Shown here piece by piece: positions 40,320 to 50,992 of a stretch of DNA of 50,992 nucleotides. Origin of the DNA: Salisapilia sapeloensis CBS 127946. Lineage: Eukaryota > Protista > Oomycota. A program made the position numbers and the translations under genes. Each line of letters begins with the position of its first letter. Positions within the stretch are counted from its first letter, which is position 1. The stretch covers positions 1-50,992 of the forward strand of contig JAADVB010000130.1 in NCBI GenBank assembly GCA_023334545.1. Reading direction: 5' to 3'. The notes beneath the pieces were generated by a model, which was given only the letters and a program-made list of their open reading frames with translations, made no database searches and was not told the origin of the DNA.

Positions 40320-41306
40320 ATGCCACTTCGAGTGACGGTGAACAGAAAGCAGAAGAACTTGTCGGACTTACTACGATGGTTACGCGCCACTCGACGTCGA
40401 GTCCATCGAACGAATGCGCCCGTTCAGCACTACTACGATATTGAACGAGAACTTGGAGAAGGCAAGACTGCCAAAGTGTATTTGGCGACTAGTAAGCGAC
40501 AGCAGGTCGGAAAAGTGGCGATTAAAGTCATACCGAAGGACTATTTGAACACGGAAGGTCGGTTAAAAGCACTCAAGATGGAAATGGGCGTGCTAAAGAC
40601 CATCAAACATCCAAATGTCATTGAACTGGTGGAAATATTGGAAGGACCAGAGCAAGTCGCAATCGTCATGCAGTGTACGCAAGGTGGAGAAGTGTTAAAG
40701 GAGTTGGCGAGTGCACCGGAAAGCAGTACATTGACTGAAAGAGATGTGGCGCATGTAATTCAAGATGTGTTGCATGGTATTCAGTACCTCCATGCACGAG
40801 GCATCACCCATCGAGACGTCAAGCCGGAGAACATTTTGTGTAGAGGAAAAGGAAGTTGGCACGATGGCGTTGTACTCATCGACTTTGGACTCGCTTATAA
40901 AGCCAAGAACAGTCGAGATAAGATGACGGGGATGAATGGAACGAGTCACTACATGGCGCCCGAGATGTTCGGACGAGATAGTCAGTACGACTGTGCAATC
41001 GATCTATGGGCAGTCGGTGTCACGACGTACATCCTTCTGTTCGGCCAATTCCCATTCGATGCCAAGTTCCTCAGTCAAGTGGAAGACAAGATCGCTGTTG
41101 CCGACTATACCTTTCCAACAGAATGGGGTGCCCAAGTTTCCAAGCAAGCAAAGGATTTCATCCGCAAACTGCTTGTCGTGGATGCCGAGGATCGATTGAC
41201 AGCGAAAGAAGCACTGCACCATCCGTGGATAGCAATGGAAATGGAGATGGAACCGTTTAGTGAAGACCACGTCCATGCGATTGCGTCCTTTGGTCTACAT
41301 GATTAA
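40320..41306 (+). CDS. CaMK-group Ser/Thr protein kinase
   Basis: GEGKTA loop, VAIK, HRDVKPEN, DFG, YMAPE, DLWAVG, RLTAKEALHHPW; no long regulatory tail. Confidence 0.93.
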   Translation: MPLRVTVNRKQKNLSDLLRWLRATRRRVHRTNAPVQHYYDIERELGEGKTAKVYLATSKRQQVGKVAIKVIPKDYLNTEGRLKALKMEMGVLKTIKHPNVIELVEILEGPEQVAIVMQCTQGGEVLKELASAPESSTLTERDVAHVIQDVLHGIQYLHARGITHRDVKPENILCRGKGSWHDGVVLIDFGLAYKAKNSRDKMTGMNGTSHYMAPEMFGRDSQYDCAIDLWAVGVTTYILLFGQFPFDAKFLSQVEDKIAVADYTFPTEWGAQVSKQAKDFIRKLLVVDAEDRLTAKEALHHPWIAMEMEMEPFSEDHVHAIASFGLHD

Positions 41307-47494: not shown

Positions 47495-47510
47495 CAATTT
47501 GGAAATGAGC
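47495..47510 (-). promoter_or_regulatory. INR/FPR-like core promoter of the secreted oxygenase gene
   Basis: Minus strand GCTCATTTC-CAA-ATTG versus consensus GCTCATTYB-NNN-WTTY (one mismatch), 52 nt upstream of the ATG. Confidence 0.6.
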
Positions 47511-48090
47511 TCTCTGTGGACTAAACCAGAAACAAGGACGGACGAATGCATCCGACGATGACAGGCATTATCGATTGGGTTGACCTACTTGAACATCTTT
47601 GTTGTCTGTTCATCTCCAAGTTACCACCTTAATCGATACCAATCTCATGATTTTAAATTGTACCATTCTTGTGCACTGACTTACGTCACTGTAGTCCATA
47701 GGTGGAGAGGGTGCAAAATGTTATTGTTGCCTAGGCACCACGTCACTTCATTTTATATCAGAAGCGTTTCATTGAGTGTATAGACAAAATTTAATTCACG
47801 TACGCTGCTTTGTGCGTGTGGTGAAGATGCCTGCATTTGGAAAAACCCGGATAATGTCTAGGTGAACTATCTATCTGCCCAATTCAACAAACTTGTTGGC
47901 TACTTCTATGTACGCATTCTGATTTTGCTCGTGGAGACGAAAAGCGATGACACGCTACACTGCATTGATAGTACATTATTGAATGGGTATCATCAACTGC
48001 AATTGATCTATTCAGCGACGTACTACAACGAAGTAGGTACAATCCAATCAATTTAAACGCGAACAAGTCATTTTTGCAAAATATATATTG

Positions 48091-50070
48091 CTACTCGAGT
48101 GAATGGTACCGCCGAAGCACTGGATTATTATGCACCTTGCATCCAATGCACCTACAGTCATCGCCACAGTCACACTTACCTCCATAGTTTTTTGCACATC
48201 CTGGAGCTGACCAACCAACCGCATAAGCTGTTTCTCCTGCTAATTCGTCCACGAGGTCGGATAGATCGTTCATATAGTTCAAGTCAGACCCACAAGCACC
48301 AAATTCAGTTGCAGCGGAACAAGTAGGGTAACTGGAAGTCGACAGAACTTGTGGAGTATCACCAGATCTCGAGACGTATGCAGTCTTAAACCCCTTTGCT
48401 TTTACATGCTGAATGAGTGAAGCATCATCTTGCACAAACGCTTCCACAATGACCTCTTTTCTCTTTGGCAGTAGCAGTATATTCTGTACTCCTTCCACCT
48501 CGGCAAGACTGGTACGAATCCCATCTGCAGCGACATATAACCGGTTCGCATCGTCCAAGTGGAATGTATAACATAAAGGCAAAGCTTGCACGTAGACTAG
48601 TTTGCAATTGAATCCATAGCCGGATAGTGCAGAATCTAGACTTTGCAACGACATACAGCCTTCTACTGTCAGTCGACGCAAATCAGTGTGAAGCTGCACG
48701 AATGTGACGCTCAATATAGTGCGAACAGCGGTCATAATATCAGACATATTGCTGTCTGCAACGTCACCAGGTAGTAACTCATAAATCACCCGCTTTCGAA
48801 GCCAGGAAAGTTTTGTAGCGCTTTCCACTTCACAGCTCGCGTGTGTCCAGCCAAACATGTCGGTAACTGCTGATACTTTGAGACTTGCATCTGTGTACAG
48901 TACAAAGCTAAAAGTGTTCTCTGTGAAATCTTCCGGCTCAGTATGGACACTTCGAACACCTTCGATACCCTTTAGCATGGACTTCACTAGTGTTTTATCC
49001 AGTCGAATTGGAGATGTAACACTAATCACGATCCGGCGGAGGGTGATATCATCAGATACAAACTGGTCTCTAGCACTGTTTCGACTCGACGGGGCTTTCT
49101 GCTCAAGTGTTTTACGCTGCATAGGCGTCAGCATCTCTGGTCTCGCATGATTGATGGGGGGCGGATTAGATGGCAAGCGTCCGTGAGCTTTAGGAATAAC
49201 ACTTTCGGATGCAGCAAGCACTGTGCTATTATTGCTTTGATCGACATCCATGACAAGACCTAGTAGACGGGTGCTTTCACTTACAGACCATACTGGTGAG
49301 ATAGATTGTATAGATGGTGGTGAGACGTTATCTTCGGAGCTAGAAAGAGCTACGGATGAACCGTCCATCTCTTTAGAAGTCAGGTTGGTGTCCAACTCCA
49401 CTGCAGCGAATGATTGACGCAGGTTGCCTGCTGATTCCTTTTCCTTGCCTGTTAGACTGTCTTGTGTAGTGCCTGGTTCTTCAGTGATATCTTTATTCTC
49501 ACTGGACACTTCATGGAGCTTACAAAAACGACGTAGTGGTGCTCTCACAGTACGTTGACAGCCAGACTGGTTGCAACGCCTACGATGACCATGAACCCAG
49601 CACTTACCTCGTCCTTGACTAGTCTTCTCACACCCTGGCTCAGTACATTTCCGACCTCCACCATGAGCCGAACAAAAGCCGCCACCGATGTCAGACTTTG
49701 TGCATTCAGGATACTGGCATCGCTTGCCGCCTCCGTGAGCTCGGCAGTACCCACGTCCAGCATCTACCTTGTTACAGTTTGACGCTCTGCATTTTGCCCC
49801 TCCACCATGAGTACGACAATATCCTCCAGCCTGCGCTCCTTTCGTGCAGTTATTAGCCTTGCATTTAGGACCTCCGCCATGGCGTGTACAAAAGCCTCCT
49901 CCAGCGTCGATCTTTACACATCCACTCTTACTACACAAGCGGCGGTTGCGTTTCCGCGTACCAGTCTTTACCATATCGGTATCGTGCGTGTAGAGAAATA
50001 CTGACTGTGAAGCTCCGTTACACTTAGACGCCATAGCGTTCGTCGATTGGTCGCGTATCGTGGATGCCAT
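48091..50070 (-). CDS. Multi-domain metal-binding protein: six C-x4-C-x9-C-x2-H repeats, three HMA-like folds and a Cuf1/Mac1-type Cys-rich motif
   Basis: 659-aa ORF. Repeats at aa 46-186 (CSKSGCVKIDAGGGFCTRHGGG type); HMA-like segments at about 49045-48370; C-terminal CDCGDDCRCIGCKVH. Confidence 0.9.
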   Translation of the reverse strand: MASTIRDQSTNAMASKCNGASQSVFLYTHDTDMVKTGTRKRNRRLCSKSGCVKIDAGGGFCTRHGGGPKCKANNCTKGAQAGGYCRTHGGGAKCRASNCNKVDAGRGYCRAHGGGKRCQYPECTKSDIGGGFCSAHGGGRKCTEPGCEKTSQGRGKCWVHGHRRRCNQSGCQRTVRAPLRRFCKLHEVSSENKDITEEPGTTQDSLTGKEKESAGNLRQSFAAVELDTNLTSKEMDGSSVALSSSEDNVSPPSIQSISPVWSVSESTRLLGLVMDVDQSNNSTVLAASESVIPKAHGRLPSNPPPINHARPEMLTPMQRKTLEQKAPSSRNSARDQFVSDDITLRRIVISVTSPIRLDKTLVKSMLKGIEGVRSVHTEPEDFTENTFSFVLYTDASLKVSAVTDMFGWTHASCEVESATKLSWLRKRVIYELLPGDVADSNMSDIMTAVRTILSVTFVQLHTDLRRLTVEGCMSLQSLDSALSGYGFNCKLVYVQALPLCYTFHLDDANRLYVAADGIRTSLAEVEGVQNILLLPKRKEVIVEAFVQDDASLIQHVKAKGFKTAYVSRSGDTPQVLSTSSYPTCSAATEFGACGSDLNYMNDLSDLVDELAGETAYAVGWSAPGCAKNYGGKCDCGDDCRCIGCKVHNNPVLRRYHSLE

Positions 50071-50449
50071 GATCTGTACATGGGGCTCGTAAGATTTGAC
50101 ATGGAAACTACCATTTCAACCATAGAAGACCATCTGCCACTGCAGCTGCTGTAGGTGGATCGGTAGCATATCAGCTCGGTCAGTAGCACAGTATAGAATC
50201 AAGACGTGATGAAGTAGATCATGTACACCGTTTATATTATCTTGCAAGTATATTTGGATTGGCTACCGTCGATGATATCATTTAAGCACACATGATCATT
50301 CTGCCACGATGGGCTTTAGCTGCACAAACGGTTTCAAGAGCGCTTGCTAGTAGCTCAGGGATATGACATAGCGAGAGTGTTACAACTGTGCAAGTTTTAT
50401 GAAATGAGGTCCGAGGCTATTCAGGATCGAAGGTATAGTGTGGATTAGT

Positions 50450-50992
50450 TGAGGCGTGCGAGGTGGATTATGTAGTATCGATAATGTTTGTGCACAAATT
50501 GAAATGTATCTTACTGGCAGTAAGATATCGCTCCCTGTCTACCACCATCTACCGACAATAGTCTCTGTCGGAAGCGGATATATCAATACAAGTAATTTAT
50601 ATGCCATGTAAAAAAGGAGACTTATAACTCTTTTGTAGCAAATACAAAAAGCAAGCAGAAGTATGTGATCAAAGTACTACAAGTAAAGTGACCTCGACTA
50701 AAAATATACGGCAGCAATTCCCACCTTCGTGTCTGTTTACTGACTTGAGACGGCCTAGTTGGCATCGAGTTGTTCCGTGCATACTAGCAACAGAAATTCT
50801 ATCGGCCAGAGCAAAATCTCTCCAAATCATACTTTGTTGTCTCCGGCAAATAAACAAGAAAGCACCAAACGAGCATTTCTGCGATCTTTATCGATAGGTT
50901 TGAATGCCCAGAGCTCCAGATCGTCGTGACCACCTTAGTGAGCGCGACGAGTTTCAAAATGCACTTCATCCCGGCAGCTGATGTGCTGTATC
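50450..50992 (-). CDS. Possible 3' exons of an intron-rich gene entering from the right edge
   Basis: GGHDDLELWAFKPIDKDRRNARLVLSCLFAGDNK, a 49-nt GTATGA...GCTAG spacer, then YARNNSMPTRPSQVSKQTRRWELLPYIF in frame. No family recognised. Confidence 0.25.

What the first reader, a model, noticed from the sequence alone, without database searches (positions are those of the whole stretch)
48091..50070. Candidate oomycete copper sensor/regulator: zinc repeats + HMA folds + Cuf1-type Cu motif
Seen: basic RKRNRR, five regular C-x4-C-x9-C-x2-H repeats plus a sixth with x11, a disordered linker, three beta-alpha-beta-beta-alpha-beta HMA-like units without the MxCxxC loop, and C-terminal CDCGDDCRCIGCKVH. 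Established: S. pombe Cuf1 senses Cu(I) through C-x-C-x3-C-x-C-x2-C-x2-H and S. cerevisiae Mac1 through a closely related motif, both paired with a copper-fist DNA-binding domain that is absent here. Inference: oomycetes may have independently assembled a metal-responsive regulator by joining this Cu module to WRKY19-like GGG zinc repeats, with the HMA folds docking chaperones or ATPases. DNA binding by these repeats is unproven.
Basis: partly seen in the sequence, partly recalled or inferred. Interest (0 to 1): 0.82.

Follow-up and report, generated by a model that had tools for sequence, protein, structure and literature searches.

The report
Oomycete zinc-finger protein with copper-sensor tail
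This expressed, intron-less gene encodes a divergent member of an uncharacterised family found in all sampled oomycete lineages that joins a basic zinc-finger array to three copper-chaperone-like folds and a cysteine tail of the type fungal copper-sensing transcription factors use, which makes it a testable but unproven candidate copper regulator in organisms long controlled with copper sprays.

Summary
The ORF 48091-50070 (minus strand, 659 aa) is intact. RNA-run contigs cover it colinearly with silent flanks, so it is one gene.

- **Zinc fingers:** Pfam finds six Zf_WRKY19 fingers (E 1.4e-31).
- **Tail:** An unbiased search of 1.84 billion proteins links the tail motif CxCx3CxCx2Cx2H to the REP motifs of fungal copper-fist (Mac1/Cuf1-type) regulators.

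New here: the protein belongs to a family found in about 30 species from all sampled oomycete lineages, including PITG_02325 of Phytophthora infestans, and no paper searched describes it. All 33 relatives checked carry an MMCx3C metal loop in the middle HMA unit, 31 carry an extra His/Cys block before the tail, and most peronosporalean members carry an internal half-REP. The window's copy has lost all three. It keeps only the fingers, the folds and the terminal REP core, on a branch about ten times the median length.

The copper-regulator reading is plausible but unproven. Neither DNA binding by these fingers nor metal binding by the tail has been shown. An apparent HMA+bZIP relative turned out to be a mis-merged gene model. 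Interest is moderate to high at family level and lower for this stripped-down copy.

The parts
48091..50070 (-). Intact 659-aa ORF with no intron; a divergent member of the oomycete ZnF-HMA-REP family
   Evidence: ORF list. Colinear alignment to P0001 at 29% identity over 93% of the query, E 4.6e-76. Profile census of the family.
48079..50123 (-). Transcribed span seen in four RNA-run assemblies: a single colinear contig in each, no joints, and zero depth in both flanks
   Evidence: Contigs 48087-50123, 48079-50076, 48092-50066 and 48094-50021 show 0 other letters and 0 gaps. Depth is 0 at 47500-48069 and 50236-50690.
49968..50123 (-). Upstream ORF that overlaps the main start codon. It has four in-frame upstream ATGs (50123, 50114, 50102, 50081), is out of frame with the main ATG at 50070, and ends inside the coding region
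   Evidence: Sequence read and ORF list. The X1 RNA contig reaches 50123. Any regulatory role is untested.
49939..49956 (-). Basic patch RKRNRR (residues 39-44) directly before finger 1, resembling a monopartite nuclear localisation signal
   Evidence: The pattern [KR][KR]x[KR][KR]xC sits at the same position in 24 of the 34 family members tabulated, the window copy among them; relatives with N-termini cut short by their gene models were not excluded from the count. Nuclear import is inferred, not shown.
49513..49935 (-). Six Zf_WRKY19 zinc fingers (residues 46-186). This is the most conserved part of the protein and is very basic
   Evidence: Pfam PF24906, E 1.4e-31. Identity to relatives is 52-58% here against 20-29% in the C-terminal half, and all Cys and His ligands are invariant. 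The region has pI 10.0 with 33 K/R against 7 D/E.
49048..49503 (-). Acidic, S/T/P-rich, Cys-free linker (residues 190-341). The internal half-REP found in most peronosporalean relatives is absent
   Evidence: Composition. Internal GCxRSxGGxCxCx3CxC is present in most relatives but not here.
48802..49047 (-). HMA-like unit 1 (residues 342-423). It has no metal loop in any family member
48580..48801 (-). HMA-like unit 2 (residues 424-497), homologous to the Pfam HMA domain of the relatives
48748..48777 (-). Beta1-alpha1 loop of unit 2 (residues 432-441, LLPGDVADSN), where all 33 relatives have MMCx3C(G). Both cysteines are lost here
   Evidence: Alignment A1 and ligand table. The RNA contigs are identical to the window across the ORF, so this is not an assembly error.
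48367..48579 (-). HMA-like unit 3 (residues 498-568). It has no metal loop in any family member
   Evidence: AF2. Foldseek against Swiss-Prot models aligns model residues 1-232 to the triple and tandem HMA arrays of Cu P-type ATPases, E 4.5e-12 to 1e-7.
48121..48321 (-). C-terminal Cys/His-rich tail domain (residues 584-650). C593, G-W, P-G-C625 and the REP core are kept. The His, two Cys and the A-H that are nearly invariant in the family are lost
   Evidence: Alignment A4. AF2 pLDDT is below 50, as expected for a metal-dependent region. A profile search finds no similar solved structure.
48130..48174 (-). REP-type motif C633-x-C635-x3-C639-x-C641-x2-C644-x2-H647, followed by NNP
   Evidence: Regex and sequence read. 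The spacing is the same as Aspergillus nidulans Mac1 REP-I, C339/341/345/347/350/H353 (PMC6354809). Fungal copper-fist proteins share the pattern CxCG[DE]xCxCxGCxxH.

Best explanation
**Shown.** The gene is expressed and unspliced. It encodes a divergent member of an oomycete-wide, uncharacterised protein family with this order of parts: an NLS-like basic patch; six or seven Zf_WRKY19 zinc fingers (very basic); an acidic disordered linker; three HMA-fold units; and a roughly 60-residue Cys/His tail that ends in a Mac1/Cuf1-type REP motif.

**Inferred for the family.** I read it as a metal-responsive regulatory protein, most likely responding to Cu(I). The finger array would bind nucleic acid in the nucleus. 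Unit 2 of the HMA module, with its MMCx3C loop, would receive Cu(I) as Atx1-type domains do. The Cys-rich tail, and the internal half-REP where present, would assemble a cuprous-thiolate cluster. As in Mac1 and Cuf1, that cluster would fold the C-terminus back onto the N-terminal finger and NLS region and so switch activity or localisation.

**Inferred for this species.** The receiver loop, the extra tail ligands and the internal motif have been lost. If sensing persists, it rests on C625 plus C633-H647 alone, which is six Cys and one His and enough on paper for a Mac1-like Cu4 cluster. The HMA folds would then serve only as scaffold.
Against: No experiment or paper shows that Zf_WRKY19 fingers bind DNA. 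The AF2 model of the finger array has no significant structural neighbour; the best Foldseek E is 2.3. The window protein lacks the HMA metal loop, three or four conserved tail ligands and the internal motif, and it sits on a terminal branch of 8.3 against a median of 0.85. Its metal response may therefore be weakened or lost. In Aspergillus the REP motifs are dispensable for the low-copper response (PMC6354809). Cys-rich motifs of this kind also resemble metallothioneins: Pfam gives only weak metallothionein hits, E 0.0004 to 0.055, all below the cut-off. They could bind Zn(II). No copper-related gene neighbours were seen. The one apparent link to transcription factors (HMA+bZIP) was an artefact.
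Confidence: 0.42

Rival explanations
1. A cytosolic copper-handling protein (chaperone, buffer or delivery scaffold) rather than a gene regulator. The HMA units and Cys-rich tail would bind or pass on Cu(I), and the Zf_WRKY19 fingers would mediate protein-protein contacts.
For: HMA folds are typical of chaperones and ATPase N-termini. One source names a relative 'copper chaperone CopZ' by automatic annotation. The tail gives weak metallothionein-like Pfam hits. Small stand-alone proteins with two REP-like motifs and no DNA-binding domain exist: P0034, P0038, P0050 and P0062. No DNA-binding evidence exists for the fingers.
Against: The finger array is the most constrained part, is strongly basic (pI 10), and is preceded by a conserved NLS-like patch. 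The REP motif with this exact spacing was found here otherwise in proteins that include copper-fist transcription factors. An acidic disordered linker between a basic array and a sensor module is a typical transcription-factor layout; this last point is inference.
Confidence: 0.25
2. In this species the protein is a relic of the family that no longer senses metal. It would be a constitutive zinc-finger protein whose HMA folds are purely structural and whose tail motif binds structural Zn(II) or nothing.
For: It is the only one of 34 members without the MMCx3C loop. It has lost H, C, C and A-H in the tail block and the internal half-REP. Its terminal branch is about ten times the median. The C-terminal half is only 20-29% identical to relatives against 52-58% in the fingers.
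Against: The REP core, the upstream C625 and the G-W/P-G-C signature are all kept despite the extreme divergence around them, which argues for selection on that motif. The three HMA folds still model at pLDDT about 90. The gene is expressed. The whole lineage is deeply divergent: a neighbouring kinase is only 41-50% identical to its oomycete orthologues, so part of the long branch reflects the lineage and not relaxed selection.
Confidence: 0.22
3. A gene-model artefact: two separate genes, a zinc-finger gene and an HMA/Cys-tail gene, read through as one ORF.
For: The two halves are joined by a 150-residue low-complexity linker. Several database relatives are annotated without fingers (P0020-P0026).
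Against: One uninterrupted ORF. Single RNA contigs of 1928-2037 nt span both halves in four runs, with no joints. About 25 full-length orthologues have the same order of parts. In the Phytophthora aleatoria locus the full Bremia protein aligns colinearly in one HSP.
Confidence: 0.02

Closest known systems
Fungal copper-fist regulators of the Mac1/Cuf1/GRISEA type (Pfam PF00649 plus C-terminal REP motifs)
   Same: The terminal motif CxCG[DE]xCxCxGCxxH has identical spacing to Aspergillus nidulans Mac1 REP-I, with an extra Cys 7-8 residues upstream and H-N-(N)-P after it, as in the fungal REP-II type. The sensor module sits at the C-terminus, far from an N-terminal basic zinc-binding region. Most oomycete relatives have a second, internal copy, recalling REP-I and REP-II.
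   Different: There is no copper-fist domain. The N-terminal module is a six-finger Zf_WRKY19 array. Three HMA folds are inserted, which no copper-fist regulator examined here has. The window copy has only one REP.
HMA-domain copper chaperones and Cu P-type ATPase N-termini (Atx1/HAH1, CCS domain 1, Ccc2a, ATP7A/B, HMA5/7; Pfam PF00403)
   Different: The family's loop is MMCx3C, not GMxCxxC. Units 1 and 3 never carry cysteines. The window protein has none in unit 2 either and does not reach the Pfam model. There is no ATPase or SOD-activating domain.
Zf_WRKY19 (PF24906) repeat proteins of plants and stramenopiles
   Same: The same 24-residue finger, C-x4-C-x9-C-x2-H-G-G-G-x-[KR]-C, in tandem; 38-47% identity to plant, labyrinthulid and other oomycete arrays.
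   Different: Those proteins carry only the finger array or other partners. The HMA-plus-REP C-terminal half was found only in oomycetes. The function of the fingers is unknown in all of them.
Drosophila MTF-1 C-terminal Cys cluster
   Same: A short Cys cluster placed C-terminal to a zinc-finger DNA-binding array forms a Cu4 cluster that controls a transcription factor (PMC2396432). This is the same logic as proposed here.
   Different: There is no sequence similarity, the Cys spacing differs, the fingers are of the C2H2 type, and there are no HMA folds.

Membership tests
Zf_WRKY19 zinc-finger repeat (Pfam PF24906) | Profile score above the curated cut-off | tested here: met
   108.3 bits against a cut-off of 27, E 1.4e-31, six stretches.
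Zf_WRKY19 zinc-finger repeat (Pfam PF24906) | Complete C-C-C-H ligand set in each 24-residue repeat | tested here: met
   Five C-x4-C-x9-C-x2-H repeats and one with x11. The ligands are invariant across nine family members.
HMA domain (Pfam PF00403) | Beta-alpha-beta-beta-alpha-beta ferredoxin-like fold superposable on solved HMA domains | tested here: met
HMA domain (Pfam PF00403) | Sequence profile match | tested here: not met
   The window protein gives no HMA hit even at E 10. Orthologues do at the aligned position, E 6e-9 to 1e-3, so homology of unit 2 is indirect.
HMA domain (Pfam PF00403) | Two metal-binding cysteines in the beta1-alpha1 loop (GMxCxxC) | tested here: not met
   The window loop is LLPGDVADSN, without Cys. 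All 33 relatives have the variant MMCx3C.
Mac1/Cuf1 copper-fist regulators | N-terminal copper-fist DNA-binding domain (PF00649) | tested here: not met
   No Pfam hit at E 10. The domain is reported as fungal-specific (PMC5415576).
Mac1/Cuf1 copper-fist regulators | C-terminal REP motif with five Cys and one His, CxCx3-4CxCx2Cx2H | tested here: met
   Residues 633-647. The spacing is identical to Aspergillus nidulans Mac1 REP-I. phmmer reaches copper-fist proteins through this motif.
Mac1/Cuf1 copper-fist regulators | Cu(I) cluster formation and copper-dependent control of activity | not testable with these tools
   Needs metal titration, spectroscopy and genetics.
Oomycete ZnF-HMA-REP family (PITG_02325 / PHYSODRAFT_310308 type; not named in the literature) | Colinear full-length similarity with the same order of parts | tested here: met
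   29-34% identity over 93-95% of the query to P0001, P0023, P0183, P0196 and others.
Oomycete ZnF-HMA-REP family (PITG_02325 / PHYSODRAFT_310308 type; not named in the literature) | Complete conserved ligand set: MMCx3C in unit 2, the HxC..C..C..AH block, and the tail REP | tested here: not met
   Only the tail REP, C593 and C625 are kept. The other ligands are lost. It is a member by descent but an atypical one.

The most novel reading that the evidence does not exclude
Oomycetes have their own master copper-responsive transcription factor family. In it, a Mac1/Cuf1-type polycopper REP switch and an Atx1-like HMA receiver domain are wired to a Zf_WRKY19 finger array instead of a copper fist. 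That would give the first function (DNA binding) to the widespread but unstudied Zf_WRKY19 fold. It would also name the regulator behind copper homeostasis in pathogens that have been fought with copper salts since the nineteenth century. The window's species would be a natural minimal version that senses through the terminal REP alone.
Probability: 0.3. Interest if true: 0.8.

Novelty: new variant of a known kind. Interest (0 to 1): 0.62.

Why it matters
As far as the searched literature shows, no copper-responsive regulator has been described in oomycetes, and the fungal copper-fist domain is reported as fungal-specific. Copper compounds are classic agents against oomycete diseases; I state that from general knowledge. 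This family is present in Phytophthora, downy mildews, Pythium, Albugo, Saprolegnia and Aphanomyces. It combines the two best-known eukaryotic Cu(I)-binding devices, the HMA fold and the Mac1-type REP, with a basic zinc-finger array. It is therefore a concrete, testable candidate for that missing regulator. It would also be the first clue to what Zf_WRKY19 fingers do in plants and stramenopiles. The window's copy has shed every ligand except the REP core, so it is a natural dissection experiment: if it still responds to copper, the REP core is sufficient.

Tried and rejected
1. **HMA+bZIP relative (P0031, Phytophthora aleatoria).** I took this as possible evidence for a swap of DNA-binding domains and rejected it. 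The gene model spans 9 kb for 725 aa. The full Bremia orthologue aligns colinearly in one HSP at L001 3041-5008 with 72% identity, inside a 711-aa ORF with fingers, HMA and tail. P0031 is a mis-merged annotation.
2. **Structural neighbours of the finger array.** Foldseek against the PDB gave nothing better than E 2.3 (WT1, PHD, Parkin). This says nothing either way about DNA binding.
3. **Sequence and profile searches against solved structures.** The whole protein and the tail profile gave only chance hits, to a xylanase with a WSAPGC string.
4. **Exact-sequence look-up of the window protein in public assemblies.** It is not on record, so the organism could not be named. A neighbouring CAMK kinase places it as an oomycete, 41-50% identical to peronosporalean and Albugo orthologues and 37% to Aphanomyces.
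5. **Phylogenetic placement.** It is unresolved because of the very long branch. Orthologue and fast paralogue cannot be told apart.
6. **Literature searches.** Searches for Zf_WRKY19 / PF24906, oomycete copper regulators, PITG_02325 and PHYSODRAFT_310308 returned nothing relevant.
7. **ESM Atlas feature search.** It gave only weak scores (0.50-0.55) to HMA and copper-fist clusters. These agree with the other results but are leads only.
8. **RNA-binding RRM reading of the ferredoxin-like units** (Foldseek PDB top hit Prp24). I rejected this in favour of HMA. All 50 best VIA alignments are HMA domains covering whole units, and the relatives hit Pfam HMA.
Full report
**1.

The minus-strand ORF 48091-50070 is open for 659 codons.
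- RKRNRR lies at residues 39-44.
- Five C-x4-C-x9-C-x2-H repeats start at residues 46, 70, 94, 118 and 142, and a sixth with x11 starts at residue 166.
- The linker, residues 190-341, is Cys-free, acidic and rich in S/T/P (pI 4.7).
- CDCGDDCRCIGCKVH lies at residues 633-647.

Pfam recognises only the fingers: Zf_WRKY19, PF24906, E 1.4e-31, six stretches. Nothing else appears, even at E 10. There is no copper-fist domain.

**2. It is one gene and it is expressed**

Four RNA-run assemblies each hold a single contig of 1928-2037 nt. The contigs are 100% identical to the window and span 48079/48094 to 50021/50123 without any joint. Depth is zero in both flanks, 47500-48069 and 50236-50690. The runs are labelled 'RNA?' by the tool, but the restriction of coverage to the ORF is what a transcript gives and what genomic DNA would not give. 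The same data show that the unusual residues discussed below are not assembly errors.

**3. The HMA-like folds are real**

I modelled residues 337-659 with AlphaFold2 on a 19-row alignment. Model residues 1-232 have pLDDT about 90 and form three consecutive beta-alpha-beta-beta-alpha-beta units. The tail is below 50.
- Foldseek against Swiss-Prot models puts the N-terminal HMA arrays of Cu P-type ATPases in the first 15 places, E 4.5e-12 to 1e-7.
- Foldseek against the PDB gives a mixture of RRM, ferredoxin-like and ATP7B/CopA hits.

**4. The protein belongs to an oomycete-wide family**

A word-indexed search found one full-length relative at 29% identity over 93% of the query (P0001), and Globisporangium polare P0003. 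An exhaustive phmmer search with residues 337-659 against 1.84 billion representatives returned 40 hits in two groups.

The first group has the same C-terminal half. By cluster look-up it comes from Phytophthora, Bremia, Globisporangium, Lagenidium, Albugo, Aphanomyces and Saprolegnia. A profile of nine full-length members then gave about 25 further full-architecture orthologues (E below 1e-140). These include PITG_02325 (Phytophthora infestans), PHYSODRAFT_310308 (Phytophthora sojae), Plasmopara, Hyaloperonospora, Nothophytophthora, Pythium oligandrum and Pythium insidiosum. Below that the scores drop sharply to finger-only proteins of plants and labyrinthulids. All family members are annotated as hypothetical, 'HMA domain-containing' or 'WRKY19-like zinc finger domain-containing'. 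No paper in the searched library names them. The relatives reach the Pfam HMA model in unit 2, E 6e-9 to 1e-3.

**5. The tail is a Mac1/Cuf1-type REP motif by unbiased search**

The second group of phmmer hits (E 1e-6 to 1e-3) matches only through the last 30 or so residues. Among the ten I scanned, three carry an N-terminal copper-fist domain at E about 1e-17 to 1e-18. The motif table shows that oomycete and fungal copies share C-x-C-G-[DE]-x-C-x-C-x-G-C-x-x-H, including the two glycines. In the fungal REP-II type they also share an additional Cys 7-8 residues upstream and H-N-(N)-P downstream.

The spacing is that of Aspergillus nidulans Mac1 REP-I: C339, C341, C345, C347, C350, H353 (PMC6354809). 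[quoted passage not shown] The copper fist itself is reported as fungal-specific (PMC5415576, PMC10406608). I cannot tell whether the oomycete and fungal motifs share ancestry, were transferred, or converged.

**6. The window's copy is a stripped member**

This is the main new point about the window itself. I tabulated conserved ligands across 33 relatives.

| Feature | Relatives that have it | Window copy |
|---|---|---|
| MMCx3C(G) in the beta1-alpha1 loop of HMA unit 2 | 33 of 33 | lost (LLPGDVADSN, no Cys) |
| Tail block H-x-C-x3-4-C-x4-C-x2-Y...A-H-T-A-A-L-A-V-G-W | 31 of 33 | His, two Cys and A-H lost; C593, G-W, P-G-C625 kept |
| Internal half-REP GCxRSxGGxCxCx3CxC in the linker | most peronosporalean, Pythium and Albugo members; absent in Saprolegniales | lost (Cys-free linker) |
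| Terminal REP motif | 30 of 33 | kept |

The C-terminal half is 20-29% identical to relatives, while the finger array is 52-58% identical with every ligand invariant. In a maximum-likelihood tree the window protein has a terminal branch of 8.3 against a median of 0.85, and its position is unresolved.

Part of this divergence belongs to the lineage. A neighbouring CAMK kinase is only 41-50% identical to peronosporalean and Albugo orthologues and 37% to Aphanomyces. The organism is therefore an oomycete far from all sampled genera. Units 1 and 3 carry no loop cysteines in any member, so only unit 2 is a candidate metal site in the family.

**7. What the fingers might do**

The array is strongly basic (pI 10.0, 33 K/R against 7 D/E). 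In 24 of the 34 members tabulated, the window copy among them, it is preceded by a [KR][KR]x[KR][KR]xC patch that looks like a monopartite nuclear localisation signal. An acidic disordered linker follows it. That is a transcription-factor-like layout, but it is inference.

The AF2 model of the array (pLDDT 78) has no significant neighbour in the PDB. No literature on the domain was found. The one architecture that seemed to link this HMA module to a known DNA-binding domain, P0031 with HMA+bZIP, is a mis-merged gene model.

**8. Mechanism and odds**

My preferred reading (0.42) is a Cu(I)-responsive regulatory protein. The finger array would bind nucleic acid. The REP core would assemble a cuprous-thiolate cluster that changes the contact between the C-terminus and the N-terminal finger/NLS region, as in Mac1 and Cuf1. 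In canonical members, HMA unit 2 and the extra ligands would add a receiver site. In this species only the REP core remains.

- **Shown:** the architecture, its expression, the fold, family membership and the motif identity.
- **Inferred:** metal binding, the choice of metal, nuclear function and the switch.

The rivals are:
- a cytosolic copper chaperone or buffer scaffold (0.25);
- a relic that no longer senses metal in this species (0.22);
- a two-gene artefact (0.02, effectively refuted).

**9. Comparison and novelty**

- It is not a member of the copper-fist family. The defining DNA-binding domain was tested and is absent. It may still work like one through the shared REP module.
- It is HMA by fold and by descent. 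It fails both the Pfam profile and the metal-loop criterion.
- It is a bona fide Zf_WRKY19 protein.

The combination of fingers, triple HMA and REP was found only in oomycetes and has not been described in the searched literature. I class it as a new variant of a known kind, a Cys-cluster copper sensor on a different DNA-binding scaffold. I give moderate to high interest at family level, tempered by the lack of any functional evidence and by the degenerate state of this copy.

Earlier notes of this scan had already recorded the three CxxC-less HMA folds on this stretch (s1-282638). They had also recorded a CxxxC HMA loop elsewhere in the same genome (s1-282911), which fits the family's MMCx3C variant.

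Noticed in passing
window 49968-50123 (minus strand): An upstream ORF with four in-frame ATGs (50123, 50114, 50102, 50081) overlaps the main start codon at 50070 and is out of frame with it. One RNA contig reaches 50123. The uORF could throttle translation of the main ORF, or the usual transcription start may lie downstream of it. An earlier scan note (s1-283210) reports a similar overlapping uORF at another WRKY19-like finger gene on a different piece of this genome.
   Followed up: partly
L001 2879-5014 (Phytophthora aleatoria, GCA_018873745.1, JAENGY010000868.1): The annotated 725-aa 'BZIP domain-containing protein' KAG6955481.1 (P0031) merges the HMA part of the family orthologue with bZIP exons 4-8 kb downstream. 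The true gene is a single 711-aa ORF with fingers, HMA units and Cys tail.
   Followed up: yes
P0034, P0038, P0050, P0062 (metagenome and Logan contigs of 0.9-1.6 kb): These small proteins of 188-251 aa carry two copies of GCAxxYGGxCxCGxxCxCxGCPxH, the same preface and REP core as the oomycete tail, and no other recognisable domain. Their taxonomic origin is unknown. They may be stand-alone versions of the module, such as a metallothionein-like or chaperone-like protein.
   Followed up: no
window 40320-41303 (plus strand): The best hits of this CAMK-type protein kinase are oomycete orthologues at only 41-50% identity (Pythium, Hyaloperonospora, Albugo 45%, Aphanomyces 37%). The window therefore comes from an oomycete lineage far from every sampled genus. 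The window protein itself is not on record in the public protein collection.
   Followed up: partly
P0205 (Achlya hypogyna, 878 aa): This relative carries RING-finger and Rad60-SLD Pfam domains in addition to the fingers and the MMCx3C HMA unit, and it lacks the tail REP. It is either another merged gene model or a genuine saprolegnian variant.
   Followed up: no
HMA unit 2 of all 33 relatives (for example P0023 residue 470 and P0191 residue 417): The family's metal loop is MMCx3C(G), mostly MMCPGNCG, which has one residue more between the cysteines than the canonical GMxCxxC. An earlier scan note (s1-282911) reports GMMCMKNC in another HMA domain of this same genome, so the CxxxC spacing may be a general oomycete trait of HMA domains.
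   Followed up: no
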